A stretch of 64,000 nt of DNA from Mobula hypostoma (GCF_963921235.1 NC_086106.1:25792001-25856000), one strand, 5' to 3'; numbered from the stretch's first letter, positions 4,597-56,653 are shown. The notes: a model not told the origin generated them from the sequence alone. A program made the numbers and translations.

Positions 4597-5030
4597 AGGA
4601 AGCGAATGTCAAATGAAATTTATCTTCATCAGAAGTATTTAGTGTGACAGCATGTACAATGCTGTCTAGTCATGTACAACCTCAGTATCCCGAGGTTGCA
4701 CTCTTCTTCAGTGTTAATCGCTCAAGGTAGTGAAAAATGAAGTCCAGCAAAAAAGTTAACCACAAGATAGTCTTCTTGGCAACAGAGAGACATGGACATG
4801 CTTCGGAAATGCTTCGGAAAGCCGCCACAATATCACGAGGTAAAGCGAAATTTAAGAAGTGTTCCTCAAGTTTGATCGCATTTTGCAGCTGAATGCAGCA
4901 TTTCAAATCGACCACGTGATCCTCATGCTTTCTGCGTACAGCTGATCCAGTTCCCCAGCAAATGGTGCCCTCTAGTGATCACGTAACACTGGATTTTGTG
5001 CCAGACCCTCTCCCTCCCTGCAACACTGAG

Positions 5031-5320
5031 TGGGTCCTTCACACAGAGGTGCTTTATACACCAGAGTCAGGAACAAAAATTCCAGAGATACTTGAATGAG
5101 CTGACTCTGCGTCTGTGCATTACAACTGTAAACCTCGCCCGACATTCTGAGGCAGCTCCAGTTTTCCTCAGTCATAGAGCTTCAGCAGTTTTTAGGAGAT
5201 TCTCTGCGATGCTGTTTGTATCAAACATGTTTGTCTTAGTTCGCGTGAAACTGCATTTCAGTGTTATAATCTGACTTTCGTCAGCCGATAATTTAGGAGC
5301 AGAATTGTACTTTCTAGTCC
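5031..5320 (-). pseudogene. TCR V pseudogene, family B (V exon only, leader deleted)
   Basis: Acceptor ttgcag at 5321-5326; remnants QIITLKC, ECRARF, ISGIFVPDSGV in different frames, with stops; heptamer mutated to CTCAGTG (5024-5030); intron fused to a family-A 3' flank. Confidence 0.85.
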
Positions 5321-5852
5321 CTGCAATAAAGAACAGATCATCCGACAGATAATCTGTCCGATTAACTAAATACTCAGTATAAATCATGAGTAGCTGTTGT
5401 ATCTTCCTTAATTTCAGTGGATTGTTCATTTCCGGCTTTCATTGTCATGCCACTTGCAATTATCTGTCATTCTGAAAAGCAACAATTTTGCTACACTCTG
5501 TTTTCCATTGAGCACTTTAAACATATCCCGGTTCCACTCGGTCCGTTTAATTTTCCTTGCAAACAAACGGACAAAGTGGCCAAAGACAATGTCAGTCAAG
5601 GCTGTCCATCGTTATATACCCTTACAACAGAAGAAGATGGGCGAATGCACATTGCGTTATTCAGGAAGTGAATTGCAAATGTGCAGTTCGGTTGCGACTT
5701 ATAATCAGAAACTGTTCCTTCAGCTTCGGCGCCTTGTGCTGCTGCTTACGCGTGCAGGGCACGTGACCATGGATGATTTCCGGGTGCGTCCCTTCCAGAT
5801 TCGCCGCGAAAAGGCGCCCTCCTTTACGAGTTTTTTGCATCATACAGGACCA

Positions 5853-5891
5853 GTTTTTTGTCCGGATCTGCTGTCTCCATACAACAGCGTG
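5853..5891 (-). other. 23-RSS of V at 5.9 kb
   Basis: Heptamer CACGCTG (5891-5885), 23-bp spacer, nonamer ACAAAAAAC (5861-5853). Confidence 0.85.
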
Positions 5892-6310
5892 GTCCTCATT
5901 GCACAGAGATACCTGCCACAGTCCGACACGAGCGTTTCACGGATCTTTAATTCAGCCGTCTTGCTGTCCTTAGCCAACTAGCGGTAAACCGATGCATTCG
6001 ATTCATTTCTCCACTGCCAAATGTCTCCAGCAAATAATTTGGAGGTTTCCCACTTTGTTGAATGTACCAAAAGATATATGGATTATCGTAAGTGTAATTA
6101 CAGTTCAGTGTTATGTTCTGGCCTACCTTGGCCGTTAAATCGGGATGATCCTGCTTCACTGAATCATTCCCACTCGCTCCTGCAATAAAGGACAAAATAC
6201 ATCAACGACGCCGGCTTGTATTGAACGCAGAGATAATTCGCCAGCCACCTTCGCAGACACTCACCAGGCAGCACAGTCAGTGTAATCAATAATAAACAGA
6301 GCGAAATCAT
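5892..6310 (-). pseudogene. TRAV: TCR alpha/delta-type V, family A short-CDR2 subgroup, single-base frameshift
   Basis: Leader 6310-6265 MISLCLLLITLTVLPG, GT donor, AG acceptor at 6180-6182, V exon 6179-5892 (288 nt vs 289 in the intact paralog). A 1-nt deletion near 5970 shifts FR3; the downstream frame reads KTAELKIRETLVSDCGRYLCAMR. Confidence 0.88.
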
Positions 6311-6481
6311 GGTGTATAAATTCTGACTGAATCTAACGTCAGCTGCCTTCAAGGACGTAAGTATTACTGAATAGATATTGTGTTGTGAGGTCTTTTCAGC
6401 TATACCTTTCACGATATGTAAGAGCGGGTGCGTTTTCTTGGTCAAAGGACTGACTGACACAATGAACCGCGATTTTCTGAG

Positions 6482-6491
6482 CACCAATCAG

Positions 6492-6495
<4 letters not shown>
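6482..6495 (-). promoter_or_regulatory. Inverted CCAAT / Y-box (CTGATTGG on the coding strand) of V promoter
   Basis: caccaatcagaatc about 175 bp upstream of the ATG; the same motif sits upstream of other family-A leaders. Confidence 0.6.

Positions 6496-6569
<74 letters not shown>
6495..6569. repeat. (CT)n microsatellite
   Basis: Pure CT dinucleotide run. Similar runs at about 15895-15963, 20978-21018, 41051-41092, 42362-42413, 49295-49340 and 59890-59950. Confidence 0.95.
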
Positions 6570-6574
<5 letters not shown>

Positions 6575-7515
6575 CAAGATGTTCTTACAGGCAACGAACA
6601 TATAGTAGAAATGCTTCGGAACCCGCCACAATATTCTGAGGTAAATCTAAATTCAAGAAGTATTCCAGAGGTATGGGTTTCACATTGTGTTGGACTGAGA
6701 GCGTTTCCCTGTTTAAAGGATCCGTTGCCAGAAACAGCCGACACCTTCTGAGCACCAATCAGAATCTGTTTTGTTTCCATAGTATCATTCTGACTATTTC
6801 TTTGCTTTATCCTGGTAACGCGTCCTTCCCTCTCTCTCTCTCTTTCTCTCTACCTGTCTCCCTCTCTCCATTTCTCTCTCTCTCTCACCTGTCTCACGGT
6901 ATGTAGAACATCTTCCCTAACCCTACATCTTACTCAAAAGTGCTAGAGCACATTTATCAATAAAATGATAAGTATTTGTCACCCTATCTTTCAGTGTCAT
7001 ACCATTCGTTATGCATAGTCAAATCGAGGAACACCGATTTTCCCCCACTCTCTGACATTCTTTATTGAATACATTCCACATGCGCATTCGCCTTGATCTG
7101 TAGCATTTGATGTTGCACCGCATTCAATATTTTCTATCTCCAAGTTCGACGATAACCTCACGGTTGCTCCATTAAGGATCCCTGACAAACTGGCAAAAAA
7201 ACAACGTTGAATACAGTTGACTACCGTGATATGGCATCCCATGCAAAAGAGGGTATTTAGATACTGTAGATATACACGAAATGCAATGTAATGCTTTCAA
7301 TTGAGTTGCATCCAGGATAACTACTCAAGCTCGACATATGTTGCGACCAAGCGGCGCCCATTTAAGTCGACCACGTAACCTTACTAATATCTGTGTCCGC
7401 TCCTTGCAGTTAAATGGCAAAAGCAAAACAGGCCCTCCGCTGACATTTATTGCATCACCCAGAACTGTTATATTTCTGTTTACGACCAGACCAGAGGTTT
7501 CCCTGCAGGAGCGTG

Positions 7516-10505: not shown

Positions 10506-10801
10506 ATACTCATTGAACAAAGATACATGCTGGAGTCAGAAACATGAGCTTAAACGATCTGCAATTGAGCTGTCTTGCTGCCTTCCTGCAGAATAGCGGT
10601 GAATCTCACTGGGCAATCTGGATGCCGCTGTATTCTTCCTGTGCTATATAGCATCAGCAAATAATTTGGAGGTTTTCCACAATGCTGAATCCACCAAAAG
10701 ATATCTGCATCATCGTTGGTGTAATTACAGTTCAGTGTTATGGCCTGTCCTTTTTCAACCGAGCCTTTCTGAGTGCCAATCAGAATCTGCTTTGTTTCCA
10801 T
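10506..10801 (-). pseudogene. Leaderless TCR V pseudogene, family A
   Basis: EKGQAITLNCNYT...IFWWIQH...HPDCPVRF...LQIV*AHVSDSSMYLCSMS with an in-frame TAA. Heptamer mutated to CATATAG (10505-10499) with a 23-bp spacer. The V exon 5' end is fused directly to promoter sequence at about 10756. Confidence 0.88.
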
Positions 10802-12578
10802 TCGTCATTCTGGGTTCTTCTCCGCTCATTCAAGGTCCCGCGTCAACCCCCCGCCCTATTCCGTCTCTCTGTCTCACACTCTCTCTTTCTCAGTGTGCCC
10901 AACTGCCTCTGCCCCCGTTCTCTGCAGAATTACAGCATATTCACATACTTATCGATGTGCAATCCAGATGAATTATGAATTTTCACGTGGTCACTTCGTC
11001 GCTTTCGTCAATATTACGCTGGAAGTATGTATTTATTCATTTGTTTATTTAGTCAGTTATTTGGAGATATATCCCACAATTGTCCCTTAGCTCAACATTT
11101 ATCGGTCTTCCGGCATTGAACTAGTTATTCAATGTCAGCAAGTGTTCGTCTGGTTGTTCCCTAGTCTTTGTTTTCTGTTAGGGAGCCAATCTCCTATCCA
11201 CGCCAATAGACTCCTGACATCACCCTTTACGCAGCCACCACTCCTTTCGTTAAAAAAAAATCACATCTGGCAGTCCCCTTGTAATTGTTTCCCATCGCAA
11301 AATATCGTCCTCTCGCATGATCCATTTTCACACTTAGGTTGTCCACTCTGTCTTGCTTCTTGTCATATTATACATAGCTACAAACTAACCCCTCATCTTC
11401 CGTCTTTCCAAAAAAAAAAATAACTTGTTCCCAGAAACTGAAACGTCCCGGGAAGTATGCATGCACTTCCGGATGTGCAACTGAACTTCAGCATTACCAT
11501 TCGCCCTCCTTTAATCGTCAATGCAGAGAGCTTAATCCTTCCCAAACGGTTCTACAAAAGAGGGACAAAATGACTAAACATCCATTGCTCCTGCTGCACC
11601 TGCAACACACCCACTGTATATTCGCCCAAAAATTCACCAGGCAACACAGCCCATATAATCAGTAGCAATCAAGGAAGCACATGGTGTCTGCTTTCAAGCG
11701 CGATCTAAATCCAGATTACATACAAGAAGCTAGTACCACAGATTTGAAGGAATGTTATCAGATACGCTGCACCCTTCATTTCGTGTAAAACCTGTGAATA
11801 TTGCTCTGCTAAATGGGAATTGAACCGGGGAAGGCACAGCTGAGCCTGTTTAGCCACCGATCTGACTGGAACTACTACACACTGTTTAGTTCTATATTTC
11901 TATTCTACTTGGCGATCTCAAACCTCATCTCTTCGTTCCTTCTTCCTCCTATATTTCCATCCCTGTGTCACTCAGTCGCCCAATGGCTGCCTGTATATTC
12001 CAATCTCCATTTTTTCTAAATCATCAATGCAGATGTTAACTAGTTGTGGGAACATCGTTTAATCCACTTCCAGTCCACTCGGGATTCATTTTCAATCCGA
12101 AAGATAAACACCCGTTTTTCTCCACTTTGAGGAAGCTAATGTTAAATGACGCCACCTAAAATTTATCTTCATCTAAGCATTTAGTGTTACAGCTAATAGG
12201 ATGTTGTCTGGTCATATACACCCTCAATATCTCCAGATTGCACTCATCTTCACTGCTAATCCCTCAAGGTGGTGGAAAATACTGTCCAGCAAAAAAAAAG
12301 CCAGAAGATATTGTTATAGGCAGGAAAGACAGACATGGTCACCGAGATGTAGTAGAAATGTTCCGGAAAACCGCCACGATATCCCTAGGTAAAGATAAAT
12401 TTAAGAAGTTTTCCACAAAGTTTGGCGCATTTTGCTGCTGAATACCGCGTTTTAAGTTGACCACGTGATCCTCATGCTCTGCGCGTGCAGCTGTTCCAGT
12501 TTCCCAACAAAAGTCGCCCTCTTGTCATCACACAAGGCTGGATGTTGCCCGTAACCGCTGTCGCACTGCAACACTGAG

Positions 12579-12988: not shown

Positions 12989-13181
12989 ACTCCCTGTCTT
13001 CAGAGTCGACAGAACGGCAACTTACTTCCGAGAATTTAACACTACGGCAAGTATTGAAGAGTAAAAGTGTATCAGAAGAGACTTCACGGTGCCCTGCTCA
13101 ACGATGGCAGATGACACAAACTGAGGCTACATGTGGACGAATCAGAATCCGCTTTCTTTGAATTCCCATTATTGCCTTTTT

Positions 13182-13318
13182 NNNNNNNNNNNNNNNNNNN
13201 NNNNNNNNNNNNNNNNNNNNNNNNNNNNNNNNNNNNNNNNNNNNNNNNNNNNNNNNNNNNNNNNNNNNNNNNNNNNNNNNNNNNNNNNNNNNNNNNNNNN
13301 NNNNNNNNNNNNNNNNNN
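13182..13318. other. Assembly gap (N run)
   Basis: 137 Ns. Further gaps at 36807-36967 and 45850-45995; all lie where paralogs carry CT-rich tracts. Confidence 0.99.
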
Positions 13319-15120: not shown

Positions 15121-15134
15121 CCACGAACGGTTTT

Positions 15135-15891: not shown

Positions 15892-15964
<73 letters not shown>

Positions 15965-18050
15965 GATGCCAATGGGAGAGATGGAGAAATTACTGCCTAT
16001 TCCCAGATGAGCATATCGGTATAAAAAGAATGCTTAATACTGACTGTAACATCAAAACAGTGAGAGCTGATTCCTCTCTTGCTTTTGAACCAGCCATATC
16101 AGTCTCCAATTTATTAGTGGGAGAGAGAGCAAGAATGCCTGTGAAACGATGAAATGTTGCAGTAAACAGCTAGCTTTGTTGTACTGTAGACCAAGCCACT
16201 CTTTGTGTTTGTGGTTGTTTCGATGGTGATTGGTGGTGGAAATGCTGATGCTTTATGCTAGAATAAATGAGAGAGGCAGAAGCTGGTTAGGTTAATGCTG
16301 CTTGTCGCTGATTGAGCGACGGATATGGCAGGGGACTTTTAGGTTCTTATCTTTTTTTCTGATATTGATGCTTTGAGTTTTTGTTCTGTTTTAAGGATGT
16401 CTGTGGAGACTTAAATTTCAAGTTGTGCATTTTCTACCTCTCTGATTTTAGGCGGAACCATTCAAACAAGCTGGACATTCGTTTCGCTGCCCCCTGGTAC
16501 ATCTGACAACAACAAATGATATACATAAACCAGTTTCATGTAACTGTCAGCGTCTGCAAAGTGAAGGAATATGTCAGGCTGTCCTTCATTAGTTCATTGA
16601 ACATGGGTTGAGCAGGAAAGTGGCGGTGGTGATGGACTGCAGAGCGCCTATCATGACACCCTGGCGATATCTGGTGTCATGTCCCAGGGATTCGGTTCGA
16701 TTCCGACCTTCCGGTGTGTTGCGGATACTTACATGCTCAGCTTCCACAATTCCCGAGTTGCTGTGTTTTCCACTGCCCGAAAAGGACGCTCTGGATAGCA
16801 CGTGTTCGTGATCGGAGATCACTGAATGTACATGTTAAGAGGAATTTGTGAAATTGGACAGACAAATCAGTTGACAATAAGACCATTAGATATAGGAACT
16901 GAAGTAGGCCATTTGGCTTGTCGAGTCAGATCCGTCATTTCAGAGGAGAAGATACACTAAACATATAATTAAAATGAGATTTTCAAAAAGTCGAAATATA
17001 CCTTTGGAAACAGATGCTATCAGTTTGTGCTCCTTCGACAGTAACGGGACGTTCTCACTGTTTTTCTCTGTCATCCATGAGAAAAAAACAAAGTTCTCAA
17101 AGCAAGTTCCATGAAACAACAATAGACTATTCCCACTTGCAAGAGTACTAAACGGCAGCATGGAATTGAATCTTAATCTTGGTATGAACTATCTCTCTAT
17201 TACCTGCCTGCTCTGTTTTTTAATACGTCTGTTACAGTTTATTTATGTATCCTTTTATTGTTTTACTTTGTAGTCACTCAATAAGCTGTGCAGTGAATTC
17301 ATCTGGACAAACAGAATCAATGCAATAATGCGTCAATAATTAACGATATCCGTTTTCAATTCAGATATGTAGCAAAATGCTGCACGTGGTGATAACATCG
17401 GATCCGTTCAATCCGACTGGGAAACCAGATTATACTAGCAATCAATCTTTTATGATACCATTCCCTCTCTCTTCCTTCGTTCGCTTTTATACTGAAAATG
17501 CCTTCAAAAATATGAATCTCGGGGTAGTATGCGGTCACGTATATATACTTTAATCATAAATTTAATTCAAACATTGAACTTTTTTCTCACAGCTTGGGAA
17601 TGCAACGACCAAACGAGTATCTGCATTCTCCAACACGCTAGGCATCCGCTGGTTCTGCCGAATTATCTAAATACTCAGTATAAATTGTAAGTAGCTGCTG
17701 CAACATCCTTAATTTCAGTAGCATGTCACTTGCAGTTACTTGTCAATTCGCAAACGTCTAACTTTCACACCCTCTGTTTTCCTTTAGTCAGCCGTTGTAC
17801 CATTTAAATATATCCCGGTTCCACTGCGTCCTCATTATTTCACACTGCAGGTACTTGAACAAAGTGGCCAAAGACGATGTCAGACAAGGCTGTCAATCGT
17901 GATCAGCCGTTGCGGCAAAAGGTGGTGGGTGATTGCACATTGCGGTATCCCAGAAAGTTATAAAGCTGAGTTTGTGTCCGCGTTGTAATCAGGAACTGCT
18001 CCTTTAGCTTCGGCGCCTTCTGCTGCTGAATGCAGTGGTCTGAAGTAGGG

Positions 18051-18118
18051 CACGTGACTGTGACTGATTTCCGGGCGCGCCCTCTGCAGATTCCTCGGAA
18101 AAAGGCGCCCTCCAGTGA
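18051..18118 (-). promoter_or_regulatory. E-box (CACGTG) plus CTCF-like motifs downstream of RSS
   Basis: CACGTG 18051-18056; gcgccctctgcaga 18077-18090; gcgccctccagtga 18105-18118, matching the CTCF core consensus in reverse complement. Confidence 0.65.
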
Positions 18119-18142: not shown

Positions 18143-18181
18143 AGTTTTTGCACGGAGCCGACGTCCCCATATAACAGTGTG
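18143..18181 (-). other. 23-RSS of intact V at 18.2 kb
   Basis: CACACTG (18181-18175), 23-bp spacer, GCAAAAACT (18151-18143). Confidence 0.92.
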
Positions 18182-18613
18182 GTACCCATTGCACAGAGAT
18201 ACATGGCAGAGTCCGACACAAGAGCTTCATGGATATTCAATTGAGACGTCTTGCTGCCTTTCTGTAAAGTAGCGGTAAACCTCTCTGGGCAATCAGAATG
18301 CCGCTGCATTTCTCCTGTGCTATATAGCTTCAGCAAATAATTTGGAGGTCCTCCACTATGTTGAATGTACCAAAATATATCTGGATTAGCGAGGGTGTAA
18401 CTACAATTCATTGTTACGTTCTGTCCTTCCTCAGTCGTTACATCGGGAGTATCCTGCGTCACTGAATATTGCCCACTCGTTCCTGCAAGAAAGGACAGAA
18501 TATAACAACAACGCTGGCTTGTATTGAATGCCGGGAAAACTCGCTAGCCAGCTTCGCTGAGACTCACCAGGCAGCACAGCCAATGCAATCAGCAATGAAC
18601 AGAGGGAAATCAT
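18182..18613 (-). CDS. TRAV: Intact TCR alpha/delta-type V gene segment, family A (leader 18613-18568, V exon 18482-18182)
   Basis: MISLCSLLIALAVLPG/TSGQYSVTQDTPDVTTEEGQNVTMNCSYTLANPDIFWYIQHSGGPPNYLLKLYSTGEMQRHSDCPERFTATLQKGSKTSQLNIHEALVSDSAMYLCAMG; GT-AG 85-bp intron, canonical Cys/Trp/Cys, good RSS. The alpha vs delta assignment is inferred. Confidence 0.92.
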
Positions 18614-20973: not shown

Positions 20974-21022
<49 letters not shown>

Positions 21023-21999: not shown

Positions 22000-23421
22000 G
22001 CTTCTGGCTTCAGCCTCGACAGGACGGCGGATAACTTCCAAGAAATTATCGCTATAGCAGACGTTAGGGAATAAAATTGTATCACAAAGGATTTCACGGT
22101 GCCCTGCTCAACGATTGGTCGAGAATACGGAGCAGGTGCTCTATGAACGCGAAGAAGAATCGGATTTCGTTGATTTTCGCTCTCTGCCTTTCCCCCCACA
22201 CTGTAAAACTTCCTCCGCATCTCTCTCTCTTTTTCCCTCCTCTCTCTCCACTCTCTATCTCTCTCTATCTATCTATTTATCTGTCTTTCTCTCTTTCTTG
22301 CTCTTTCTCTCTGTCTCTCTTTCTCACTCTCTTGCTCTTTTCCCGCCTTGTTCTCTGACACTTCAGCTCTCTTTCCGAACATTGATTTCTATTTATCTAC
22401 CTCTTTTGTTCCCTCCATGAATTCATTCTCGCTCCATTTGCCTCTGCTCTCTCCCTTCTGACACCATGTCACTCCATGCTAACCAGCGTATTACTGAGTC
22501 ATCCACCATGTTATGACTTTCTATTGGTCCTGCTATTTATCTTATCAATAGCCTTTTAATTCATTGACGAAATACCTTTCAATCTATCAGCATCCCGCTA
22601 GATATTGCTTGTCAATAGCACACCAAATATTTACTCCCTAATATTTTTCCATAAGTGAGCCAATCTCCTGTACATTGCAATAGACTCAATTGAGAATTTA
22701 TTTTCTGCAGTTGCCTTCGGCCTCACATCTTAATGGCTCCTTTCGCAGAATATAAAGACCCTTTAATTCCTGTTCACCGGGTGCCATGACGGAAATCATG
22801 CGAAGTGTTCAAAGTCGTGACCGTGTATTGTAGACAACAAGAGGAAATGGATATTGTGATGTCTCGGAAGTCTTTTAAATTCTTATGTGTACCGACAAAC
22901 TGAATTTAGGCCTAGCCGCCTGCGATCCTGAGAGTTGCCAGGTTAAGGCGAACGAGAGACCCTCCTTCGTTTCCGCGTCTATTCTTAATTCGTTTTCTTG
23001 TCAGCGCTCTGTACACTAGCTAGCGACTGTATTGCCGTGTCGCTTAATCCCCTTTAACGGTGCGTGCTGCATGGCAGAAAGATACAATGAAGAGTCCGAC
23101 TTAAGAGCCTCGGTGATGTATCATTGAACTATCTTCGTTCATTTCGCAAACCAGTGGTAAATAGCAAAACATATTTTCGATGTTTCTACGTTTCTAAGTT
23201 TCTATGTCTTGACGTGCCCATGTGTCTCGCTTCCGACGGAATCAGAAAGACCATAAGACCATAAGATATAGCTACAGAAGTACGTCATTTAGCCCATCGA
23301 GTCTGTTTTGCATTCAATCATGGGCCGATCCAATTCTTCCAGTCATCGCCATTCCTCTGCCTTCTCTCCATACCCTTTGGTGTTCATGCTAATCAAGAAC
23401 TTAGCTCTCTCAGCCATAAAT

Positions 23422-27740: not shown

Positions 27741-27759
27741 TTGGAAAAGGTTGTGAGTG

Positions 27760-35899: not shown

Positions 35900-35965
35900 C
35901 ACGTGATTCTCGCAAATATTTGGGTGCGCCACTTCGACTTTTCTAGCACGACTGCCCTCTAGCGA
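35900..35965 (-). promoter_or_regulatory. Orphan E-box + CTCF-like module without adjacent RSS or V
   Basis: CACGTG 35900-35905 and ctgccctctagcga 35952-35965, at the same offset as the V-linked copies. Confidence 0.55.
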
Positions 35966-36591: not shown

Positions 36592-36617
36592 AACCTATAA
36601 GAAACTGAGGGACACAT
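36592..36617 (-). pseudogene. Orphan family-B leader remnant fused to a family-A 3' flank
   Basis: acctataagaaactgagggacacat matches the leader at 49058-49082; the sequence to its left matches the A flank up to the RSS nonamer position. Confidence 0.7.
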
Positions 36618-37821
36618 GCTCCCTCGCTTCAGCCCCGCTGGGATCGCGAATCACTTACAACAATTTATCAACATGACAGAAAACGGAGTGTAAAACGTAT
36701 CGGAAGTAGACTGAATGGTGCAATGCTCAACGATTGCAAGATAAAACCAGAACAAAGGCTATATGAGCATTAGTCAGAATCCAGTTCAGTTGAAAGCCCC
36801 TTTTTGNNNNNNNNNNNNNNNNNNNNNNNNNNNNNNNNNNNNNNNNNNNNNNNNNNNNNNNNNNNNNNNNNNNNNNNNNNNNNNNNNNNNNNNNNNNNNN
36901 NNNNNNNNNNNNNNNNNNNNNNNNNNNNNNNNNNNNNNNNNNNNNNNNNNNNNNNNNNNNNNNNNNNCACCCTACCTGTCTCCATCTATCTGTTTATCTA
37001 CCTTTCTCTGTATATCTCATTCTCCCTTTCTCACTGTTTTGCTCTATCCCTACCGACTTCTCTCTCTCATTCTCACTCCGGACATTGATTTCTATTTTTC
37101 TATTTATCTACTCAGTCTCGCTTTCTTTGGCATTCTGCCCGTGCCCTATCCTTTTTCACAGCATGTCACTCCGTGCCAACCAGCGTATCAGCGACAATTC
37201 CAACGAGTCATCCGCAAAGTTAGGACTTTCCGCTGTTGCTGTTATCTAAATTATGATTAGCCTTTTAAGTTATTGACGGAATACCATTGAATCTTCCAGG
37301 ACCCCGTTGGATATTTCTTGTCAATAGCAGATTAAATATTTATTCCCATAGAGGAAATGGGATTAAATGGTTAGCGGTCATGGAAGGCACTGGTTAGAGC
37401 AGACACACATTGCGAACACTGAGGTGTCCAGATCCTGTATCGCCGTGGAACGTTGAGTGTTGAACTGCGCAAAGTTATTCAGTGGAGTCCGGCACGATGC
37501 CCACGAACCTATATGAGCGAAACATCTTTCCCCAGAGACCGGAATTATTACTGGACTTGTCTTCGCGTAGAAAAATACAGTGACACAGTCTGCTCTTCCA
37601 CGGTCGTTACATCTCTCCTTTTTGGGTTCACAAACTCTGCTCCACTCGTCCCTTTAATAGGCCCCGAATGTACAGGGGCGACAGAACGCACTGACCGTGC
37701 AGGACGCGCTCAGACCGATTAGACTGATTCACCAAGCAGAGTAGCCGATACAAAGACCATCCAGGGGTGGTTGTAGCGGGAACATCGTACATTGAGTAAA
37801 GTAAACAGAGAGTGATTTAAG

Positions 37822-41046: not shown

Positions 41047-41095
<49 letters not shown>

Positions 41096-41726
41096 CTCTT
41101 TCCTCCTGAAAATGGCTTCAGAATATAAGTGTATGGGTAGTATGCGGTCAAGTATATGTACTTTAATTATAAAGTAATTTTAAACATTGTACCTCATACG
41201 CTATCACGTTAAACATTGGCAGGTTCTGTCGCATTATCTAAATACTCAGTATAAATCAATGTCGCTTTTGCAACATCCTTAATATCGACAGCATGCCACT
41301 TGCAAATCTTTGTCAATCTGCAGACCACCATTTTTCCCACCTGTGTTTTCCTTTTGTCAGCAATTATCCTATTTAAATATATCCCGCTTCCATTCTCATT
41401 ATTTCTCGCTGCAGACAGTGGAACAAAGTGCCCATAGACAAGGTCACGCAGAGTTGTCAATCGTGGTATGCAATTGCAGCAAAAGCGTTTGAGTGAAAGA
41501 ACATTGCAGTACCCCGGAAATGCATTTCAAAGTTCCAGTTTAGTTGCGCATTGCAATCAGGAACTGCTCCTTTAGATTCGGCGCCTTCCGCTGCTGATTT
41601 CAGCGCTCTTGAGTAGGGCACGTGACCATGGCTGAGTTCTATGTGCGCCCCTTCCAGTTTCCCGGAAAAAGATGCCCTCCATTGCGAGCCTTTTTTTTTG
41701 CATTATACAGAACCAGTTTTATACAG

Positions 41727-42358: not shown

Positions 42359-42418
<60 letters not shown>

Positions 42419-42884
42419 CTCTCTTTCCCATGCTGCTTTGGGTTTTTGTACTGTTTGGAGGATGTCTGTGGAAGGTATGAATTTCGTGATGTATATTGTG
42501 CACATTCTCTGATTTTAAAAGTAACCAAATTTATCAGCAGATACCTATATGCTCAGTTTCCACGTTTCCCGAGTTAGTATGTTTTCAACGTCCCACAAAA
42601 GACGCTCTAGGTAGCATTCCTTCTGATCGATCGAAGGATCACTGAGGTACGTGTTAAGAGGAAGTTCCGAGAATCGGACAGGTAAATCTGTGAACCATTA
42701 GAACATAATAAATAGGAAAAGAATTAGGCCATTTGTCCGATCGACTCTGCTCCGCCATTTCAGATCAGACAGTGTAGTAATGGAATCTTCCGAAACGGTA
42801 AACGTACCATTAAATTGAGAGTTTCAGAATTTCGAAATATAGCTTTGGAGACAGATGTATTAAACTTCTCTTTTTTCGACAGTC

Positions 42885-45167: not shown

Positions 45168-45206
45168 AGTTTCTGTCCGGACCAGCCGTCTGCATAGAAC
45201 AGTGTG
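45168..45206 (-). other. 23-RSS of intact V at 45.2 kb
   Basis: CACACTG (45206-45200), 23-bp spacer, ACAGAAACT (45176-45168). Confidence 0.92.
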
Positions 45207-45626
45207 GAACTCATTGCACAGAGATACCTGCCAGAGTCCGACACCAGAGCTTCACGGATGTGCAATTGAGCCGTCTTGCTGACTATCTGCGAACTAGCGG
45301 TAAACCGATTAATTCGATTCTTTCCTCCAATGCCAGTTCCCATCACCAAATACTTTGGAGGTTCTCCACTATGTTGAATGTACCAAAAGATATCTGGATC
45401 ATCGTAAGTGTAAGTACAGTTCAGTGTTATGTTCTGTCCTTCCGTGGCCATTAAGTCGGGAGGATCCTGCGTCACTGAAGCTTTCCCACTTGCTCCTGCA
45501 AAAAAGGACAGAATAGATCAACAACGCCGGCTTGTATTGAACGCCGGGGAAATTCGCTGGCCACCTTCACAGACACTCACCAGGCAGCACAGCCAGTGCA
45601 ATCATTAGTAAACAGAGGGAAACCAT
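45207..45626 (-). CDS. TRAV: Intact TCR alpha/delta-type V gene segment, family A short-CDR2 (leader 45626-45581, V exon 45495-45207)
   Basis: MVSLCLLMIALAVLPG/ASGKASVTQDPPDLMATEGQNITLNCTYTYDDPDIFWYIQHSGEPPKYLVMGTGIGGKNRINRFTASSQIVSKTAQLHIREALVSDSGRYLCAMS; GT-AG 85-bp intron; good RSS. Confidence 0.92.
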
Positions 45627-47740: not shown

Positions 47741-47753
47741 TTCTGTTTGTCAA

Positions 47754-47931: not shown

Positions 47932-48656
47932 TTCTGTTTGTCAATCTCACTTTTCCCTTTTTCGTTCTACTTTAATAAATACTTCATTTCTTGCAATGAA
48001 TCTCCGTCTTTGTTCCCTATTCTGTTACTGTCCTATATTTCCGTCGCTATGTCACTCAATAGCTCCCAGTCTGCCTCTGTATTCCAATTTTACTAAATCA
48101 TCAATGTAGCTTTAAATAATGTTATGGGAACTTCCCTTCATCCAACGCCAGCCCATTCGGTATTAATTTGAAATTCGTAAAATAGACATCAATTTATCTG
48201 AACTTTTAGGACGCTAATGTCAATAGACACCACCTGCAATTTATCTTCATCGGAAGCATTTAGTGTGAAAGCCTGTCGAATGCCATCTAGTTATATACAC
48301 CCTCAGTATCTCTTGGTTGTACTCATCTTCACTGTTAATACCTCGAGGTAGTGAAAAATGAAGTCTGGCAAAAAAATTAACCACAAGATATTCTTAGAGG
48401 CAACAGAGCGACATGGACACCACCATATAGTAGAAATGCTTCGGAAAGCCGCCACAATTTCCCTGGGTAAATCTAAATTCAAGCAGTGTTCCACAAGTTG
48501 GGTCACATTTTGTTGCTGAATGCGGCATTTCAAATCCACCACGTGATCCTCATGCTTTCTGCGTACAGCTGTTCCAGTTCCGCAGCAAAAGGCGCCCTCT
48601 AGTGATCACGCAACGCTAGACTTTGTACAGACCCGCTGTTTCCCTACAACACTGAG

Positions 48657-49082
48657 GGGTCCTTTGCACAGAGGTACTGTATACACTTGAGTCCGGGACA
48701 AGAATTCCAGAGATACTTGAATGAGCTGACTCTGCGTCTGTGCATTACAACTGTAAACCTCGCCCGACATTCCGAGGCCGCTGCAGTTTTCCTCAGCCAT
48801 AGAGATTCAGCAGTTTTTAGGACAATCTCCGCGATGCTGAGTGTATCAGATAGGTTTGTCTTAGTTCGTGTGCAACTGCATTTCAGTGTTATTATCTAAC
48901 TTCCGTCAGCCGATAATTTAAGAGTATTCTGATCACAGATTTGTACTTTCTCGTTCCTGCAATAATGGACAGAATGCAGTGACTTCTCTGACTTGCACTG
49001 AACTACGCTCTCGTTGGTCATGTGTGCAGTACCTTAGCTGTCAGGATGGAGAATGAAACCTATAAGAAACTGAGGGACACAT
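48657..49082 (-). pseudogene. TCR V pseudogene, family B
   Basis: Frameshifted leader (ATG 49082); V exon 48956-48657 with stops, ECRARF and ...LCAKD end; RSS CTCAGTG-23-ACAAAGTCT. Confidence 0.86.
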
Positions 49083-49296
49083 ATTCACTCGCTTCAGCCC
49101 CGAAGGGATCGCAAATCACTTACAAGAATTTATCAACATGACAGATAATGCAGAGTAAAACGTATCAGAATTAGAGTGAATGGTGCACTGCTCAACGATT
49201 GCAAGATAAAACCAGAAGACAGGATATATGAGAACTGGTCTGAATCCAGTTACGTTGGAACCCCCATTTTGCCTTTTCGCACGCTAAAAATCTCTT

Positions 49297-49338
<42 letters not shown>

Positions 49339-52173
49339 GCTTCCTCTCTTTCTTTCACTTTGTTCCCTCCTCTCCCCACTCTACCTCTCGCCATCTATCT
49401 ATTTATCTATCGTTCTCTCGTTATCTTCGTCTCCCTTTCTCACTCCTTTGTTCAATTCCAACCTACTTCTCTCTCTCGTTCTAACTCCGGACATTCATTT
49501 CTATTTCTCTGTTTATCTACATGTTTGAACGCTCTAACAACTCACTCTCGCTTTCTTTGCCATTCTGCCACTGCTCTATCCTTTTTCACAGCATGTCACT
49601 CCATGCTAACCAGCGTATCCGCGACGATTCCTCCCAGTCATCCGCAAAGTTGTGACTTTCCGCTGCTGCTGTTATCTAACTTATTATTAGCCTTTTAAGT
49701 TATTGACGAAATACCTTTCAATCTTCCAGAACCCTGTTGGATATGTCTTGTCAATAGCACATCAAATATCTATTCCCAGGGGCGAGCTGGGATTAAATGT
49801 TTAACTGACATGAAAGACTCCGGCAAGAGCCGGCAAACATTGCGAACATTGAGGTGTCCAGATCCCGTATCGCCGTGGAACGTTGGTGCTGAACTGCGGA
49901 AATCTATTTAGTGGATTCCGGCACGATTCCCTCGAAGTTATTTAAGCGGAACGTCTTTGCCCAGAGACACAAAATATTACTGGACTGTCTTCGCGTAGAA
50001 CAGTATTTCCTGTCAGGAATATTTTCATCGGTTTTCCAGAATATTGAACGCACGACAAACAGGTTCTGCCAGATTCCAAGTGACTGAAGCTCAGTGACCC
50101 GGTTTGCCCTTCCATGGTCATTAAATCTCACCTTCTGAGGTTCACGAATCTGCATCACTCGCCCTTATATCAAACCCCGAATATGTGAGGGGCGCCTAAA
50201 CCCAGTGACCTTTGGAGGGTACGCTCTGACGCTTTGCCAGATTCATCAAACAGAGTAGTAAGTACACAGAACATCCCAGTGGGAACTTGGTGATTTGAAT
50301 AAAATAAACAGAGGAAGATTTGAAGATGTTACCCCGATAAAACAGAAGTTACTCAGGTAAGTACAGCAACAGACTTTCCGGGAGACTCGGGGCTTTCGTT
50401 TCGATGTATCTTCGTTCTCCCTCTCTCTTCCTATGTTCCGATGGGAGAATTTACTGCCGATTGCCTGTCGGGGATATTGGAATTAGAAGAATGCTTGACT
50501 GTAACATCGAAACAGCGACTGCTTTCTCCTCTCTCGCTTTCGAACAAACCATACCAGACTCTCCCTTGTCAGTGTGAGAGACAGAATGCCTGTGGGACGG
50601 TGGCTGGTGGTGGAAATGCTAATGCTTTATATTACAATGAGTGACAGAAATAGAAGCGGGTTAGGTTAATGTTGCTGGCCGCTGATTTTCGAGAGATGTG
50701 GCAGTGGGCGTTCAACTACTTACATTTTTCTGACATTGATGCTTTGGGTTTTTGTTCTGTATTAAGAATATCTGTGGAGACTATATATTTCAGGTTATGT
50801 ATTGTGTCCATTCTCTGATTTTAAACGTAACTGTTTAAGCATGCTTGGCATTCTTTTCGCAGTACCCTGTTATATCTGACAACAGCAAAATATATAATAA
50901 AACGTAAACCAGTTTGGGGTATCTGTAAGTGTCTGTAAAGTGAAGGGATACTAAGGCTATCCTTCATTAGTTCATAAAAATATCGGTTAAGTGGGGAAGT
51001 GGCGATAGCTGTGTAATGCAGAGTGCCTATCGTGGCACCCTGCGATATCTGGTGCTATTTCACCATGGATCCAATTGGATTCCGACAATTTCGATGCTGT
51101 CAGCAAATACTTCTGTGCTCAGTTTCCACATTTTGCGCGTTACCAAGTGTTACACTACCTGCAAAAGACGTTCTGGGTAGCATGTGCCCGTGATCGGAGT
51201 ATCACTGAGTGTGTACGTTAAGAGGAATGTGCAACAATTGGACCGATAAATCAGTTGACTATAAGACCATAAGAATCGAGGAACGGAATTAGGCCAGTTG
51301 ATCTATCGAGTCTCCTCCACCATTTCAGAAGAGACAGTGTGGTATTGGAATCCTTCGACACAGTAAACATATATTTAATATAAGAGGTTCAAAAAATCGA
51401 AGTATACCTTTGGAAACAGAAGCTATCACTTTGTGCTCCCTCGGTAGTAATCTGATGTTCCCTCTCTGTGTCTCTTCGATCGTGAGGTGATTCAAAGTTC
51501 TAAAAGCAGCAATAGATTATTTCCTCTGCAAGAATATTGAACGGTAGGGTGAAATTGAATCCCAATCCCATCCACCTCGGTATGACCTTCCTCTTTATTC
51601 ATGCCTGCACTACATTTTTATACGGCTCTTACAATTTATTTTTGTATTCTTTTATTGTTTAAATTTGCACTACCTCTATCAGGGGTGTAGTGAATTCATC
51701 TGTGAAAACCGAATCAAGGCAATCATGTGACAATACTAAACAAAATTCCTATCCAATTTACATACGTAGCGAACTTCACCTGGAAATAAAATTATATCAC
51801 TTAAATCCGGTTGGGAAAGTAGATTATTCAAGCAATCATCCTGTTGTGATCCCATTCCCTCTCTCCTCTCTCGCGCTCTTTTACACGGAAAATGCTTTGA
51901 AAAATATAAATCTTGGAGTAGCATGCGATCACGTATATGTAGTTTAATCATAATTTCACTTTAAATATTGAAGCTCTTTCCCACAGCAACGACCAAAATA
52001 GTATCTGCATTTTCTGTCACGCTAAGCATCCGCTGGTTGTGTCGCATTATCTAAATTCTCAAAATATACAATAAGTAGTTTTTCCAACAACCTGACTTTC
52101 ATTAGCGTGTCCCTTGCAATTCTTCATCAATCGGAAAACCACAAACTTTCTCACCATCTGGTGCCCTTTAGTC

Positions 52174-54838
52174 CAGTGGACCCCAAACACCGGTCGCGGA
52201 CCTGTACCGGGCCGGAAAGCATGTGCTACCGTGCCAAGGGGAAACGATAAGATTTGTCGATATGAAACCATATGAGTCAGCTGCACCTTTCCTCATTCCC
52301 TGTCACGCCCACTGTTGAACTTGAACGCACCCGAGTTCATTACTCACGCGAGGACACCAGTTGGTCAATCACCTGCAAGTACTCAATGAGTAAAAAAGCA
52401 AACGTCGCTTGAGAGTTTCTTTGAAATAGATGGTAGCAGATATAAAAGGGCCTAACGATGACGGTAACGCAGAGACAGCTGAGGCCGACACTGCAAAAAA
52501 AAAACAGAAAACTTCGTTCAACAGAAAATGGTGACTCGCACGATCCAAGCCCCCTGTGTGTGATTTGTGGCGACAAGCTGTCTAATGAGGCAATGAAGCC
52601 CTCAAGACTGCTTCGGAAACTTGAGTCGAAGCACCCTGCATTTAAAGACAAAGCCGTTGAGTTATTTGAGCGGGAGAAACGTGAGCAAGCGGAACAGAAG
52701 CAAGGGCTGAGAACCACCACATCCACAAACGCTGCTACTCTGAGAGCGTCGTACTGAGCGGCTAGCCGGAATGCAAAGGCTAGGAAGCCTTTGACTGTCG
52801 GTGAAGAATTGATTCTGCCTGATGCCAATGACATATGCTGTGAACTGTTGGGAGACCCTGCAGCTAGCAAGATGGCACAGATTTCTCTTTTAGCTACCAC
52901 AATCTCAAGGAGAATCGATTACATAGGGGAGGACATTGAAGCACAGCTGTTTGAACGGTTTAACTAATCTGGTTTCACTACCCGAGTCAAATAGGTTGCA
53001 CCTGAATGACAGTCTACACAGTGTGTCACACACAGGGAAATGCTGGCCAGCCGAAAAATGTCGCCTGACCTTAACAGCGTATTGAGTGACGTTGTTGAAG
53101 TTATCAATCACATCAAAGCAAAAGCCCTGACCTCACGTCTGTTTGAGCAGCTTTGCGAGGAAATGGATTCAGAGCACAAACGCCTTCTCTTACACACAGA
53201 AGTCAGGTGGCTATCAAGGGGGAGCGCCCTGGCCAAGTCAGGTGGCTATCAAGGGGGAGCGCCCTGGCCAGGGTTTTCGAGAGGGAAGGGCGGCTACAGA
53301 TATTTATTTCGAGAAAAAAAGTCTCCACTGGCAGCACACTTCAGTGACGAGGAGTGGACAGCAAAACTCGCGTATCTGTGTGACATCTTCAACCTGCTCA
53401 ATGAACTCAATTTGTCACTTCAGGGAAGAATCACAACTGTCTTCAAGCTGGCAGATAAAGTGTCTGCTTTCACAGCTAATCTGGAACCGTGGGACGGCGA
53501 GTGGACAGGGGCATATTTGACATGTTCCCAACATTAGCGGGGAATTTGGGAGAAACTGAGGCTCACAGCTGGTGCAGGATCACCTAACTTCGCTGTCGAC
53601 AGAATTAGAGTGTTACTTCCCAACCTCAAATGACCCAAGACGTGCAAAGCAATGGGTCCGTGACCCATTTGTGAATGTCCCTGGGGAATCATCTATGTCA
53701 GCGCGAGAAGAAGGTCCACTCATCGAGCAAGCAAATGACGGTGGGCTGAAAAGTATGTTTGACGTAACATCCCTTCCAGCATTCTGGATCAAAGACAAGG
53801 CTGAAAAGACTGTGACAGCCACGAAAACACTGAAAACGTTGCTTCCATTTCCAACATCATATCTCTGCGAAGCGGAGTTTTCTGCAATGAATGCATTAAA
53901 ATCTAAATTGCGGAATAGACGGGACATAAGGAACCCCCTTATAATTGACCTATCACTATATTCATGCGAGGAAAATATGCGCTGTGTGTTTAATATTAAA
54001 TTCGTTAGATAAACCCCTTTAGAAACGAAATTGAGTGATTAGATTAGATTATTAGATTGTGAGGACACACAGTCCTCTTTTATTGTCATTTAGTAATGCG
54101 TGCATTAGGAAATGATACAATATTCCTCCGGTGTGATAACACAAAAACACAGGACAGACCAAGACTGAAAGAAGAACAAAACCACATAATTATAACATAC
54201 AGTTACAATAGTGCAACAATACCATAACTTTTTGAAGAACAGTCCATAGCACAGTAAAAAAGGTCGAAGTTTCTCGAAATTCCCACATCTCCTGCAGACG
54301 GAGCAAAGAAGAAAACTCTCCCTGCCATACCCGACTGCACTCCGACTCTGAGTCGCCCGAAAACTTCGAGCTCTGATCAGCCCCAAGAACCATCTCTGTT
54401 CGAAAGTTCCGAGCTCAGCCTCGTTCGCCAGCAGCAGGCAAAGCCGGTGATTTTGGGGCCTACCCTTCGGCGATTCTCGATCGCACAGTAACAACAGCAG
54501 CGAACCAGGCATTCCAGAAATTCTCCAGATGTCCTCTGCTTCACACGCCTGTCTTCATCAAATCCGAATTGTCCACGGCCCCCATTTAACGGATACGATA
54601 TCATTTTCACCGGAGAGCCGCGCCCGCGTCGCGCTGCCATCTTCTCCTCCCGCCTGAGCGTATTATTCACTGACAGAGAATATTAGATTGAGTCAATAGC
54701 CACTGATAAATGACTTAGAGTTGACGTATGACCTATACTCCGGTCGCCACCCCATCCCCCCCACCCCCGTCGGCCAGTCCGCAAGAATATTGTCAATATT
54801 AAACCGTTCCGCAGTGCAAAAGAGGTTGGGGACCCCTG
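52174..54838 (+). mobile_element. hAT/Buster-family DNA transposon, internally deleted (paralog of 23422-26295)
   Basis: TIRs cagtggaccccaaac / caggggtccccaacc; BED-finger remnant (LCVICGDKLSNEAMKPS) and broken transposase. Confidence 0.9.
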
Positions 54839-56490
54839 CTCTACCAAACCCAAACTTGTGAGAGGCGCCGTATCCTTATGGGTTGAGTTAAGAAACTGCG
54901 AGGGTGACGGAACCCTACTTGCAGCTACATACAAGCCTCCCGACAGCAGGCAGAATGTGGAGCACAGATTACAAGAGGAAATAGAAAAGGCGTCTCAAAG
55001 GGTAATGTTATGATAGTCATGGGAGATGTCAACATGCAGGCTGATTGGCAAAGTCAGGTTAGATATGGATCTCAAGAGAGTGAAACAGCATTTTAGAGAA
55101 GATTGTCCATCACCCTGCACGGCGATCAGTTGTACAGGATTGGGTGTTGTGGAATAAACTGGCGATAATTAGTGACCTTAGGATAAAAGAACAATTTCAA
55201 GGCAGTGATCCAAATACGACTGAGTTCAACTTGAAATTTGCCAGTGAGAAAGTAACGTCTGACGAAGCAGTATTGAAGAACAGGAAAGGAATTTTCAGTG
55301 GCATGAGAGGGGAGTTGGCCAACGAATTCAGAATGCAGGACTAGAAAGGACAGGCTGCAAGGGTGGACAACAGAGCAGTGAGTGCGTGAATTTCTGGGGA
55401 AAATGAGAAAGGAGCCCGATAGCTGTATCCAAAAAATGAGGATATACGCAGATGGAAAAGTAGTACAACCGTGGCTGACAAGGGGACTCAAAGCTAATGT
55501 AAAAGCAAAAGAGCGGGTATACAACTAAGCAAAAATTAGTAGCAAGACAGAGGATCAGGAAGCTTTCAAAACCCGAGAGTAAAACTAAAAGAATCATTTG
55601 GAGGAAAAAGATGATATATGAGCGCACACCAGCAAACAATATCAAAGTGGATAAAAAAGGTATTTTCAAGAACGTAAAAAAAAAGTGAATTGAGAGTGCA
55701 TATCGAAAGCAAGAAAATGTGGCCGAAGAAATAATGCTGGGGGACAAGTTGATGGCAGATGAACGATATGAGTATTTCGCAACAGGCTTCACTGTGGAAG
55801 ACCCGAGCAGCGGGTCAGACGTTGAAGGGTGCAAGGGAAGACATCTGATTGCAATTACAGTTACAAGGGTGAAGGTCCTCAAAACGCTGAACGACAGAAG
55901 GGCATATAAGTCATCCGAACAACATGAACTGCACCTTTGCGGCCTTAAAGCGGTAGCGGTAGAGATTGCGGAGGCATTAGGAATGATTTTTCAAAATCAT
56001 TGTCAATGATAAAGATGATGGAATATATGGCTGTGTTGCGAAGTTTGTAGATGATACAAAGACTTGTGGAAGGATAAATCGTTCTGAGGAAACATGCAGG
56101 CTACAGAAGGACAGAAAGATGAGGGAATGGGCAAGAGAGTGGTCGCGAAGTACAATGCACCAAAACGCATGTCATGCATATTGGTATAAGAAATAATTAT
56201 GCAGACTATAATGTAAAAGTCCAAAAATCCACGATGTAGGGAGACTTGGAGGACCCAAGTGCAGAACACCCTGACAGCTAACTTGCCGGTAGAGTCTGTG
56301 GTGAGAAAGGAAAATACGATCTTAGCATTCCTTTCAAGATGTCCAGAATACATGGGCAGAGACGTAATGCAGAGGATTTATAAGAAACGTGAGGCCACAT
56401 CTTGAGCATTGTAAACAGTTTTGGGTTCCTATTCTAACAAAAATATAGTGGCATTGGAAACGGTTCAGAGGACAGTCACATGGATGACAC
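54839..56490 (+). mobile_element. Old degenerate CR1 LINE
   Basis: Collinear with 26296-27740 plus 30664-30900. Confidence 0.75.
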
Positions 56491-56587
56491 TGTGAGTCCC
56501 GCAGGCAAATCAGCTTTCCAACTAACTGAAAAAATGTCGTCAATAATTTCTCCCCTTTCCCCTGAAGTTTCGCCTGCTTAAATCAAT

Positions 56588-56653
56588 CACGTGACAGTAG
56601 TGGCTATGTGTTTGCGCTCCGGCTGTCTTTCGGCAAAGGGCTCCCTCTAGCGA
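56588..56653 (-). promoter_or_regulatory. E-box + CTCF-like motif downstream of RSS
   Basis: CACGTG 56588-56593; gctccctctagcga 56640-56653, 23 bp beyond the nonamer. Confidence 0.65.

What the first reader, a model, noticed from the sequence alone, without database searches (positions are those of the whole stretch)
4965..56653. Co-oriented CTCF-like motif immediately 3' of almost every V RSS
Seen: a motif matching the CTCF core (plus strand GYGCCCTCYAGTGA, coding strand TCACTRGAGGGCRC) lies 12-25 bp beyond the RSS nonamer in all three V families. Strong copies are at 4965, 18105, 21517, 31052, 35952, 45130, 48592 and 56640; decayed copies at 5814, 7431, 12514, 36558 and 41672. All have the same orientation, pointing downstream of V transcription, and all three intact V genes carry a good copy 23-24 bp from the nonamer. 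Established: RSS-adjacent, uniformly oriented CTCF elements next to mouse proximal Igh VH genes promote V usage during cohesin-driven RAG scanning. Inference: the same loop-extrusion logic may operate at this TCR V array in a putative cartilaginous fish, which would make it ancestral to jawed vertebrates.
Basis: partly seen in the sequence, partly recalled or inferred. Interest (0 to 1): 0.82.

Follow-up and report, generated by a model that had tools for sequence, protein, structure and literature searches.

The report
CTCF-type box behind ray TCR V signals
Nearly every T-cell-receptor V gene copy in this cartilaginous-fish window has a same-direction CTCF-like DNA box just past its recombination signal, an arrangement known from mouse antibody genes, but only about a quarter of the copies look like strong CTCF sites and binding is untested.

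Summary
The 14-mer occurs 8 times (≤2 mismatches), all on the + strand, against 1.1 expected. The V segments are TCR-alpha type, on the minus strand, with 23-RSS. The box starts 12 nt (family A) or 23–24 nt (families B, C) past the nonamer.

Three of them flank pseudogenes and one has no V.
- The three intact V genes have weak versions (8.9, 7.3, 11.4 bits).
- The box is the best-conserved part of a ~170-bp conserved 3′ module that includes a CACGTG E-box at fixed spacing.
- Uniform orientation follows from tandem V duplication and is not independent evidence.
- Little skate has strong sites at the same position (2 of 2 V).
- Bamboo shark (0 of 6), toad (0 of 12), skink (0 of 8) and sucker (0 of 5) do not. 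One Danionella V of 7 resembles the module, but not significantly.

"Ancestral to jawed vertebrates" is therefore not shown. The scan has already flagged this feature in several other windows of this genome. I found no paper describing it.

The parts
4965..4978 (-). CTCF-type box, family A pseudogene unit; TCACTAGAGGGCAC; 19.3 bits; 12 nt past the nonamer
5814..5827 (-). decayed box, family B pseudogene; GTAAAGGAGGGCGC; matrix score below 0
7431..7444 (-). decayed box, family D pseudogene; GGAGGGC core kept
12514..12527 (-). decayed box, family A pseudogene; TGACAAGAGGGCGA; 2.9 bits
18105..18118 (-). box behind intact V (family B); TCACTGGAGGGCGC; 8.9 bits; 24 nt past the nonamer
18011..18029 (-). 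second same-strand CTCF-type site in the same module, about 90 nt further 3'; 14.3 bits
21517..21530 (-). box, family A pseudogene; TCACTAGAGGGCAC; 16.6 bits
31052..31065 (-). box, family C V with open frame but partly deleted RSS; TCGCTAGAGGGAGC; 10.3 bits
35952..35965 (-). box in a module with no recognisable V; TCGCTAGAGGGCAG; 13.7 bits
36558..36571 (-). decayed box, B-type module joined to an A-type upstream region, V exon missing
41672..41685 (-). decayed box, truncated family B V; second site at 41579-41597 scores 9.9 bits
45130..45143 (-). box behind intact V (family B); TCACAGGAGGGCGC; 7.3 bits; 24 nt past the nonamer
48592..48605 (-). box, family A pseudogene; TCACTAGAGGGCGC; 17.3 bits
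56640..56653 (-). box behind intact V (family C); TCGCTAGAGGGAGC; 11.4 bits; 23 nt past the nonamer
18051..18056 (.). CACGTG E-box of the module, 48 nt 3' of the box. Equivalent E-boxes start at 4913, 5760, 12462, 35900, 36506, 41619, 48540 and 56588
   Evidence: 9 of the window's 19 CACGTG lie in modules, at 46-48 nt spacing
18143..18181 (-). 23-RSS of intact V B_18105 (heptamer CACACTG, nonamer GCAAAAACT)
45168..45206 (-). 23-RSS of intact V B_45130
56677..56715 (-). 23-RSS of intact V C_56640 (heptamer CACAGTG, nonamer ACAAAATCC)
18184..18474 (-). V exon, intact, TCR-alpha type; leader ATG at 18613
45209..45487 (-). V exon, intact; leader ATG at 45626
56718..57008 (-). V exon, intact; leader ATG at 57148
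10508..10762 (-).

Best explanation
**What it is (shown).** Each TCR-alpha-type V unit in this array carries a conserved module of about 170 bp, on the V coding strand just past its 23-RSS. Its parts, in order:
- a TGCA block;
- a CTCF-core-type box, probably TCACTAGAGGGCGCC in the ancestor;
- a GCGCAC block;
- a CACGTG E-box fixed 46-48 nt after the box;
- in family B, a second CTCF-like site about 90 nt further on.

**How it probably works (inferred).**
- The module belonged to the ancestral V duplication unit and has been copied along with the V genes.
- Copies that keep a full-strength core probably bind CTCF. These are three family-A pseudogene units, the V-less unit at 35952 and the second site at 18011.
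- In these copies CTCF's cohesin-blocking N-terminal side would face away from the V, towards whatever lies downstream.
- They would then act as co-oriented loop-extrusion barriers or anchors spread through the V array.
- Families B and C carry family-wide substitutions at high-information positions and are probably weak binders or non-binders.

**What is not shown.** Whether a bound site raises use of the adjacent V, as at mouse proximal VH genes. In this window motif strength does not track V integrity.
For: - Enrichment: 8 hits against 1.1 expected, all on one strand.
- Matrix scores of 13.7-19.3 bits for four RSS-side copies. At 12 bits or more there are 5 minus-strand sites and 1 plus-strand site, against about 1 per strand expected.
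- AGAGGGC is the most conserved 7-column window of 275 columns, with 5 changes against 10 for the next best. Only 0.5% of column shuffles match it. It is better kept than the heptamer or nonamer.
- The box-to-E-box composite occurs 8 times, only behind V segments, at 61-63 nt.
- Little skate V segments of other subfamilies have 17.3- and 16.6-bit sites at the same position. A profile of the module finds them at E = 4.7e-5 and 0.023.
- The mouse arrangement and orientation are described in 10.1101/2020.01.01.891473.
- Loop-extrusion signatures in little skate are cited in 10.64898/2026.10.19.759930.
- The N-terminal side lies downstream of the core as written (PMC12885311).
Against: - Its consensus is right and it recovers canonical sites in other species' loci, but the scores are approximate.
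- The best copies flank pseudogenes, while the intact V genes score 8.9, 7.3 and 11.4 bits.
- Within families the 14-mer changes at the background rate (P = 0.29 and 0.73). The 8-nt core shows only a trend (P = 0.08 and 0.12).
- Average cross-family identity of the module (0.38-0.57) is no higher than that of the V intron (0.34-0.55).
- The conserved TGCA block abuts the core instead of lying 5-6 bp away, so it does not fit CTCF's upstream motif.
- CpG content gives no sign of germline protection.
- There are no occupancy data.
Confidence: 0.5

Rival explanations
1. The box is a relic. It is simply part of the flank of an ancestral V duplication unit and has been copied with the V genes. It may have been a CTCF site once, but today most or all copies have no function and are decaying.
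For: - Within families the 14-mer evolves at the background rate.
- Module identity is no higher than intron identity.
- Families B and C fixed weakening substitutions before they expanded, yet they include the working V genes.
- V_10508 lost both box and E-box.
- Uniform orientation is explained by tandem duplication alone.
Against: - AGAGGGC is far better kept across five families than any other flank stretch, and better than the RSS itself.
- Full-strength sites persist at the same place in little skate V segments that are only 53-57% identical in protein.
- The box-to-E-box spacing is free of indels across families.
Confidence: 0.25
2. The module is a different kind of regulatory element. 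For example, it could be an E-box/GC-rich element read by USF/TFE-type bHLH-ZIP proteins and another zinc-finger protein, opening chromatin or driving germline transcription at the RSS. The likeness to CTCF would then be secondary.
For: - Only the 3' half of the CTCF core (RGAGGGC) is strongly conserved. The 5' CCAC half varies at an ordinary rate.
- The second most conserved element is TCACGTG, at fixed spacing.
- An octamer-like TGCAAA(A/T) block is nearly invariant in families B, C, D and X.
Against: - The cross-family and skate consensus matches 13-14 of 15 CTCF core positions, more than a half-site.
- No alternative factor with this specificity was identified.
- The E-box is lost in one intact V (45130) and in 31052.
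Confidence: 0.17
3. The box arrived on a transposable element that inserted next to V genes, as SINE B2 elements spread CTCF sites in rodents.
For: The window is rich in retrotransposon remains.
Against: - The composite occurs only behind V segments and never elsewhere in 64 kb.
- There is no tRNA-like or Rfam match.
- The homology runs on continuously from the RSS into the module.
Confidence: 0.03

Closest known systems
RSS-associated CTCF-binding elements of mouse Igh proximal VH genes (e.g. the VH81X CBE)
   Same: A CTCF-type motif lies immediately 3' of the V 23-RSS, on the V strand. It therefore points towards the downstream recombination centre, and many are co-oriented across the array (for the mouse description).
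   Different: - The locus here is TCR alpha/delta type, in a batoid.
- Most copies are degenerate.
- Motif strength does not follow V integrity in this window.
- The box is coupled to a fixed-distance E-box.
- Binding and any effect on V usage are untested.
Intergenic or promoter-side CTCF sites of TCR-alpha V arrays in bony vertebrates
   Same: Strong motifs, mostly on the V strand, are dense in the toad, skink and sucker TRAV-like arrays I fetched (1-4.7 per 10 kb). So co-oriented CTCF motifs within V arrays look general.
   Different: In those arrays the sites lie 0.6-8.8 kb from V ends (most within about 2 kb), and none is RSS-adjacent in 25 V segments. Here they start 12-24 nt from the nonamer.
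PAIR elements of the distal mouse VH region (my own knowledge)
   Same: Repeated composite elements within a V array that combine a CTCF site with E-box-type sites.
   Different: PAIR elements are intergenic, depend on Pax5 and produce antisense transcripts. None of this is known here, and the position differs.
Chicken beta-globin HS4 insulator (CTCF site plus USF E-box; my own knowledge)
   Same: A CTCF core and a CACGTG-type USF site sit in one compact element.
   Different: There is no evidence of homology, and USF binding is untested. This is a resemblance only.

Membership tests
CTCF-binding element | Match to the 19-bp CTCF core matrix at the level of typically bound sites (about 13 bits or more) | tested here: inconclusive
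   Met by 4 of 13 boxes (4965, 21517, 48592, 35952) and by the second site at 18011. Borderline in family C (10.3-11.4 bits). Not met in families B and D (7.3-8.9 bits in the two intact B copies, below 0 in the decayed B and D copies).
CTCF-binding element | Upstream motif 5-6 bp ahead of the core (optional; present in a minority of sites) | tested here: not met
   The conserved TGCA(G/A)T block ends right at the first position of the 19-mer, not 5-6 bp before it (spacing from PMC9004084). The consensus of the upstream motif itself is from my memory.
CTCF-binding element | Occupancy by CTCF and cohesin in vivo | not testable with these tools
   No ChIP, CUT&Tag or footprint data are available here.
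CTCF-binding element | Conservation above the neighbouring sequence | tested here: inconclusive
   Across families it is met for the AGAGGGC core (shuffle fraction 0.005). Within families it is not significant.
RSS-associated V CBE (mouse proximal VH type) | Site immediately 3' of the V RSS, on the V strand | tested here: met
   12 nt (family A) or 23-24 nt (families B, C) from the nonamer, all on the V strand.
RSS-associated V CBE (mouse proximal VH type) | Orientation convergent with CTCF sites at the D/J/C end | not testable with these tools
   No D, J or C segments lie in the window. A scan note places a TCR-delta D-J block about 5.3 Mb towards lower coordinates, which is downstream of these V genes. 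I did not check this.
RSS-associated V CBE (mouse proximal VH type) | Site strength promotes use of the adjacent V | not testable with these tools
   No repertoire data. The only proxy runs the other way: the strongest sites flank pseudogenes and the intact V genes have weak ones.
Feature ancestral to jawed vertebrates | Present at the same position in sharks and bony vertebrates | tested here: not met
   Bamboo shark 0 of 6 V, plus 0 of 1 on a shark-like contig. Toad 0 of 12, skink 0 of 8, sucker 0 of 5. Danionella 1 of 7, with profile E = 5.2. The sample is small and specific to certain V families. Other scan notes report whale-shark cases.

The most novel reading that the evidence does not exclude
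An RSS-coupled CTCF plus E-box module was already part of the V gene unit early in jawed-vertebrate history. It would survive today in batoid TCR alpha/delta V genes, in scattered shark and teleost V genes, and perhaps as the RSS-adjacent sites of mouse proximal VH genes. On that reading, guidance of RAG scanning by loop extrusion was built into V units from near the origin of V(D)J recombination.
Probability: 0.12. Interest if true: 0.85.

Novelty: new variant of a known kind. Interest (0 to 1): 0.58.

Why it matters
RSS-adjacent CTCF sites are so far an experimentally understood peculiarity of the mouse Igh proximal VH region. There they decide which V genes are used during cohesin-driven RAG scanning.

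Finding the same geometry in a TCR V array of a ray, and in little skate, would show one of two things. Either the arrangement arose more than once, or it is much older than mammals.

It also gives a concrete, testable system. Natural variants of the box (full-strength family A, weakened families B and C) sit next to otherwise similar V units. Little skate already has chromatin-conformation resources.

If the sites prove unbound, the case becomes a caution about reading function from motif recurrence in tandemly duplicated gene arrays.

Tried and rejected
- **Word-indexed protein search.** It found no homologue of the V.
- **Horn shark loci.** They could not be read because the file was too large. 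Two other look-ups had no record. This exhausted the contig look-ups, so whale shark, chimaera and further teleosts were not examined.
- **CpG observed/expected as a proxy for germline protection.** The module gives 0.90, against 0.73-0.85 nearby and 0.67 window-wide. This is uninformative.
- **Homology of the Danionella flank to the module.** Short blocks (TGCAAA, core, GAATCT, CACGTG) are collinear at similar spacing, but the profile search gives E = 5.2. I do not claim homology.
- **TGCA block as CTCF's upstream motif.** The spacing is wrong.
- **Transposon or RNA origin.** There are no Rfam or tRNA matches and no copies away from V genes.
- **Within-family test for ongoing purifying selection.** Not significant.
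- **Metagenome pattern scan for the module.** I considered it and did not run it, because the expected yield of vertebrate DNA was negligible.
Full report
**1. What is in the sequence**

The pattern GYGCCCTCYAGTGA with up to two mismatches occurs 8 times, always on the + strand. Dinucleotide shuffles give 1.1 on average, and none of 100 reaches 8.

Reading the minus strand around each site shows V gene 3' ends of the type ...YLCAM. These are followed by a heptamer, a 23-nt spacer, a nonamer and then the box, which reads TCRCTRGAGGGMRC on the coding strand. The best solved-structure matches of one V are almost all TCR alpha chains.

Translation and tblastn give this inventory:

| Family | Boxes at | State |
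|---|---|---|
| A | 4965, 12514, 21517, 48592 | Pseudogenes with shared defects; heptamer CTCAGTG in three of four |
| B | 18105, 45130 | Intact |
| B | 5814 | Frameshifted |
| B | 41672, 36558 | Truncated |
| C | 56640 | Intact |
| C | 31052 | Open frame, but part of the RSS is deleted |
| D | 7431 | Pseudogene |
| none | 35952 | Module with no recognisable V |

The nonamer-to-box distance is 24, 24 and 23 nt for the three intact V genes and 12 nt in family A.

**2. Assembly gaps**

The three N runs lie upstream of V leaders, where other units carry a (TC)n microsatellite. Sequence on both sides of each gap is collinear with paralogous units. No box, RSS or V exon is touched. I did not fill them.

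**3. How CTCF-like is it?**

Its consensus is correct and it recovers canonical sites in other vertebrates' loci, but the scores should be read as approximate.

| Copy or family | Score (bits) |
|---|---|
| Family A, three copies | 16.6-19.3 |
| 35952 | 13.7 |
| Family C | 10.3 and 11.4 |
| B_18105 | 8.9 |
| B_45130 | 7.3 |
| Other copies | about 3 or lower |

- Family B carries a G where the matrix strongly prefers A (the A of YAG).
- Family C carries two changes.
- Both sets of changes are family-wide, so they predate the expansion of the families that contain the working V genes.
- B_18105 has a second same-strand site about 90 nt further on (18011-18029, 14.3 bits).
- At 12 bits or more the window has 5 minus-strand sites, all in V 3' modules, and 1 plus-strand site. 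About 1 per strand is expected.

**4. The box is part of a longer module**

Alignment of 13-14 flanks shows collinear conserved blocks over about 170 bp past the RSS:
- a TGCA block, absent from family A through a 12-nt deletion;
- the box;
- GCGCAC;
- TCACGTG;
- GACTTAA;
- CAGCAGCAnAAGGCGCC;
- GGAACAnTTCTTGA.

Cross-family identity by region:

| Region | Cross-family identity |
|---|---|
| 3' module | 0.38-0.57 |
| V exon | 0.41-0.72 |
| Intron | 0.34-0.55 |
| Further out | 0.05-0.45 |

The composite RGAGGG...CACGTG occurs 8 times. It is found only on the minus strand, only behind V units, at 61-63 nt. Nine of the window's 19 CACGTG sites lie in these modules.

**5. Is it constrained?**

Parsimony changes per column on a tree of 14 flanks are 1,0,0,1,0,1,2 for AGAGGGC. 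The heptamer shows 2-4 per column, the nonamer 1-4, and the mean is 2.8.

AGAGGGC is the most conserved 7-column window of 275, with 5 changes against 10 for the runner-up, the E-box. Only 0.5% of column shuffles do as well.

Against this:
- The 5' half of the CTCF core (TCACT) changes at an ordinary rate.
- Within families, the 8-nt core shows only a trend (P = 0.08 in A, 0.12 in B).
- The full 14-mer changes at the background rate.
- CpG content is uninformative.

Long-term preservation of the core is therefore well supported. Ongoing selection on each copy is not.

**6. Other species**

HMMER against the representative protein library found V relatives, and I fetched the encoding contigs.

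| Species | Locus | V with an RSS-adjacent site |
|---|---|---|
| Little skate *Leucoraja erinacea* (accession checked) | L001 | 2 of 2 (17.3 and 16.6 bits; V only 53-57% identical to the window's) |
| Bamboo shark *Chiloscyllium punctatum* | L003, L008 | 0 of 6; no site of 12 bits or more in 32 kb |
| Shark-like metagenome contig | L004 | 0 of 1 |
| Toad *Pelobates cultripes* | L002 | 0 of 12 |
| Skink-study assembly | L006 | 0 of 8 |
| Catostomid (sucker) | L007 | 0 of 5 |
| *Danionella translucida* | L005 | 1 of 7 (12.6 bits) |

- A profile built from the window's modules, with the RSS excluded, finds the two skate sites at E = 4.7e-5 and 0.023.
- The Danionella V has TGCAAA before the box, GAATCT after it, and CACGTG at near-skate spacing. 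The profile search gives E = 5.2 for it, so I treat this as a lead and not as homology.
- The toad, skink and sucker arrays do hold many strong CTCF motifs, mostly on the V strand. These lie 0.6-8.8 kb from V ends, most within about 2 kb.

Co-oriented CTCF motifs inside TCR V arrays therefore look general. The RSS-adjacent position is what is special to batoids in my sample.

**7. Orientation**

All V units in the window share one orientation, so 13 of 13 co-oriented boxes follows from duplication and is not separate evidence.

The core reads 5' to 3' on the V strand. CTCF's N-terminal, cohesin-facing side would therefore point away from the V, as described for insulating sites (PMC12885311) and as in mouse VH genes.

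A scan note places a TCR-delta D-J block about 5.3 Mb towards lower coordinates, which is downstream of these V genes. I could not check this.

**8. Literature**

- Loop-extrusion signatures in little skate are cited in 10.64898/2026.10.19.759930.
- Full-text searches found no paper describing RSS-adjacent CTCF motifs in a cartilaginous-fish antigen-receptor locus.
- CTCF's upstream motif lies 5-6 bp before the 19-bp core (PMC9004084). The conserved TGCA block here abuts the core and does not fit.

**9. Earlier notes of this scan**

The same feature was flagged in several other windows of this genome, which those notes call a devil ray.
- The notes on the RSS-CTCF-E-box module, and on only about a quarter of copies being strong, agree with what I found independently.
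- The statement that sharks carry the site intact is not borne out by my bamboo-shark sample. Whale shark was not available to me.

**10. Verdict**

This is a real, non-random element that is conserved across V families. Its ancestral form is a near-perfect CTCF core placed 12-24 nt past the V RSS, within a composite module that also holds an E-box.

A minority of copies are probably genuine CTCF sites. The copies beside the working V genes in this window are weakened.

The loop-extrusion and RAG-scanning role is a reasonable but untested analogy. The claim that it is ancestral to jawed vertebrates is not supported by the species I could sample.

Noticed in passing
window 6494-6570, 15895-15963, 22220-22340, 42362-42424, 49291-49353, 59885-59987 (also 20978-21021, 41050-41099): A (TC)n dinucleotide microsatellite, (GA)n on the V strand, recurs a few hundred bp upstream of V leaders. 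At least two of the three assembly gaps (13182-13318, 36807-36967) sit at the equivalent position in their units, so the gaps probably mark the same repeat.
   Followed up: partly
window 36558-36806 compared with 49057-49271: The B-type 3' module at 36558 is joined at about 36592 directly to sequence homologous to the upstream (leader/promoter) region of a family-A unit, with no V exon between them. This looks like a deletion or unequal-recombination hybrid between neighbouring V units.
   Followed up: partly
window 27729-29925 (+) and 60249-63848 (-): LINE-type retrotransposon remains fill the long spacers between V units. There are endonuclease and reverse-transcriptase ORFs on the + strand. 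On the - strand there is a reverse-transcriptase ORF plus an ORF with a weak, sub-threshold GDSL-esterase-like match.
   Followed up: partly
window 5353-6496 and 4591-5337: The family-B pseudogene at 5814 and the family-A pseudogene at 4965 lie only about 850 bp apart. The B unit's 3' module therefore lies directly in front of the A unit's leader region, which is much tighter than the spacing elsewhere in the window.
   Followed up: no
L006 (skink-study assembly) 2810, 8669, 12511, 16658: A repeated strong site of the form TTYCCACTAGAGGGC sits about 840-920 bp past several TRAV-like V ends on the V strand. This suggests a V-unit-linked CTCF site at a different fixed offset in a squamate.
   Followed up: no
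window 53200-53270: A perfect 35-bp tandem duplication (two copies), GC-rich and containing GGGGGAGCGCC, lies between V units.
   Followed up: no
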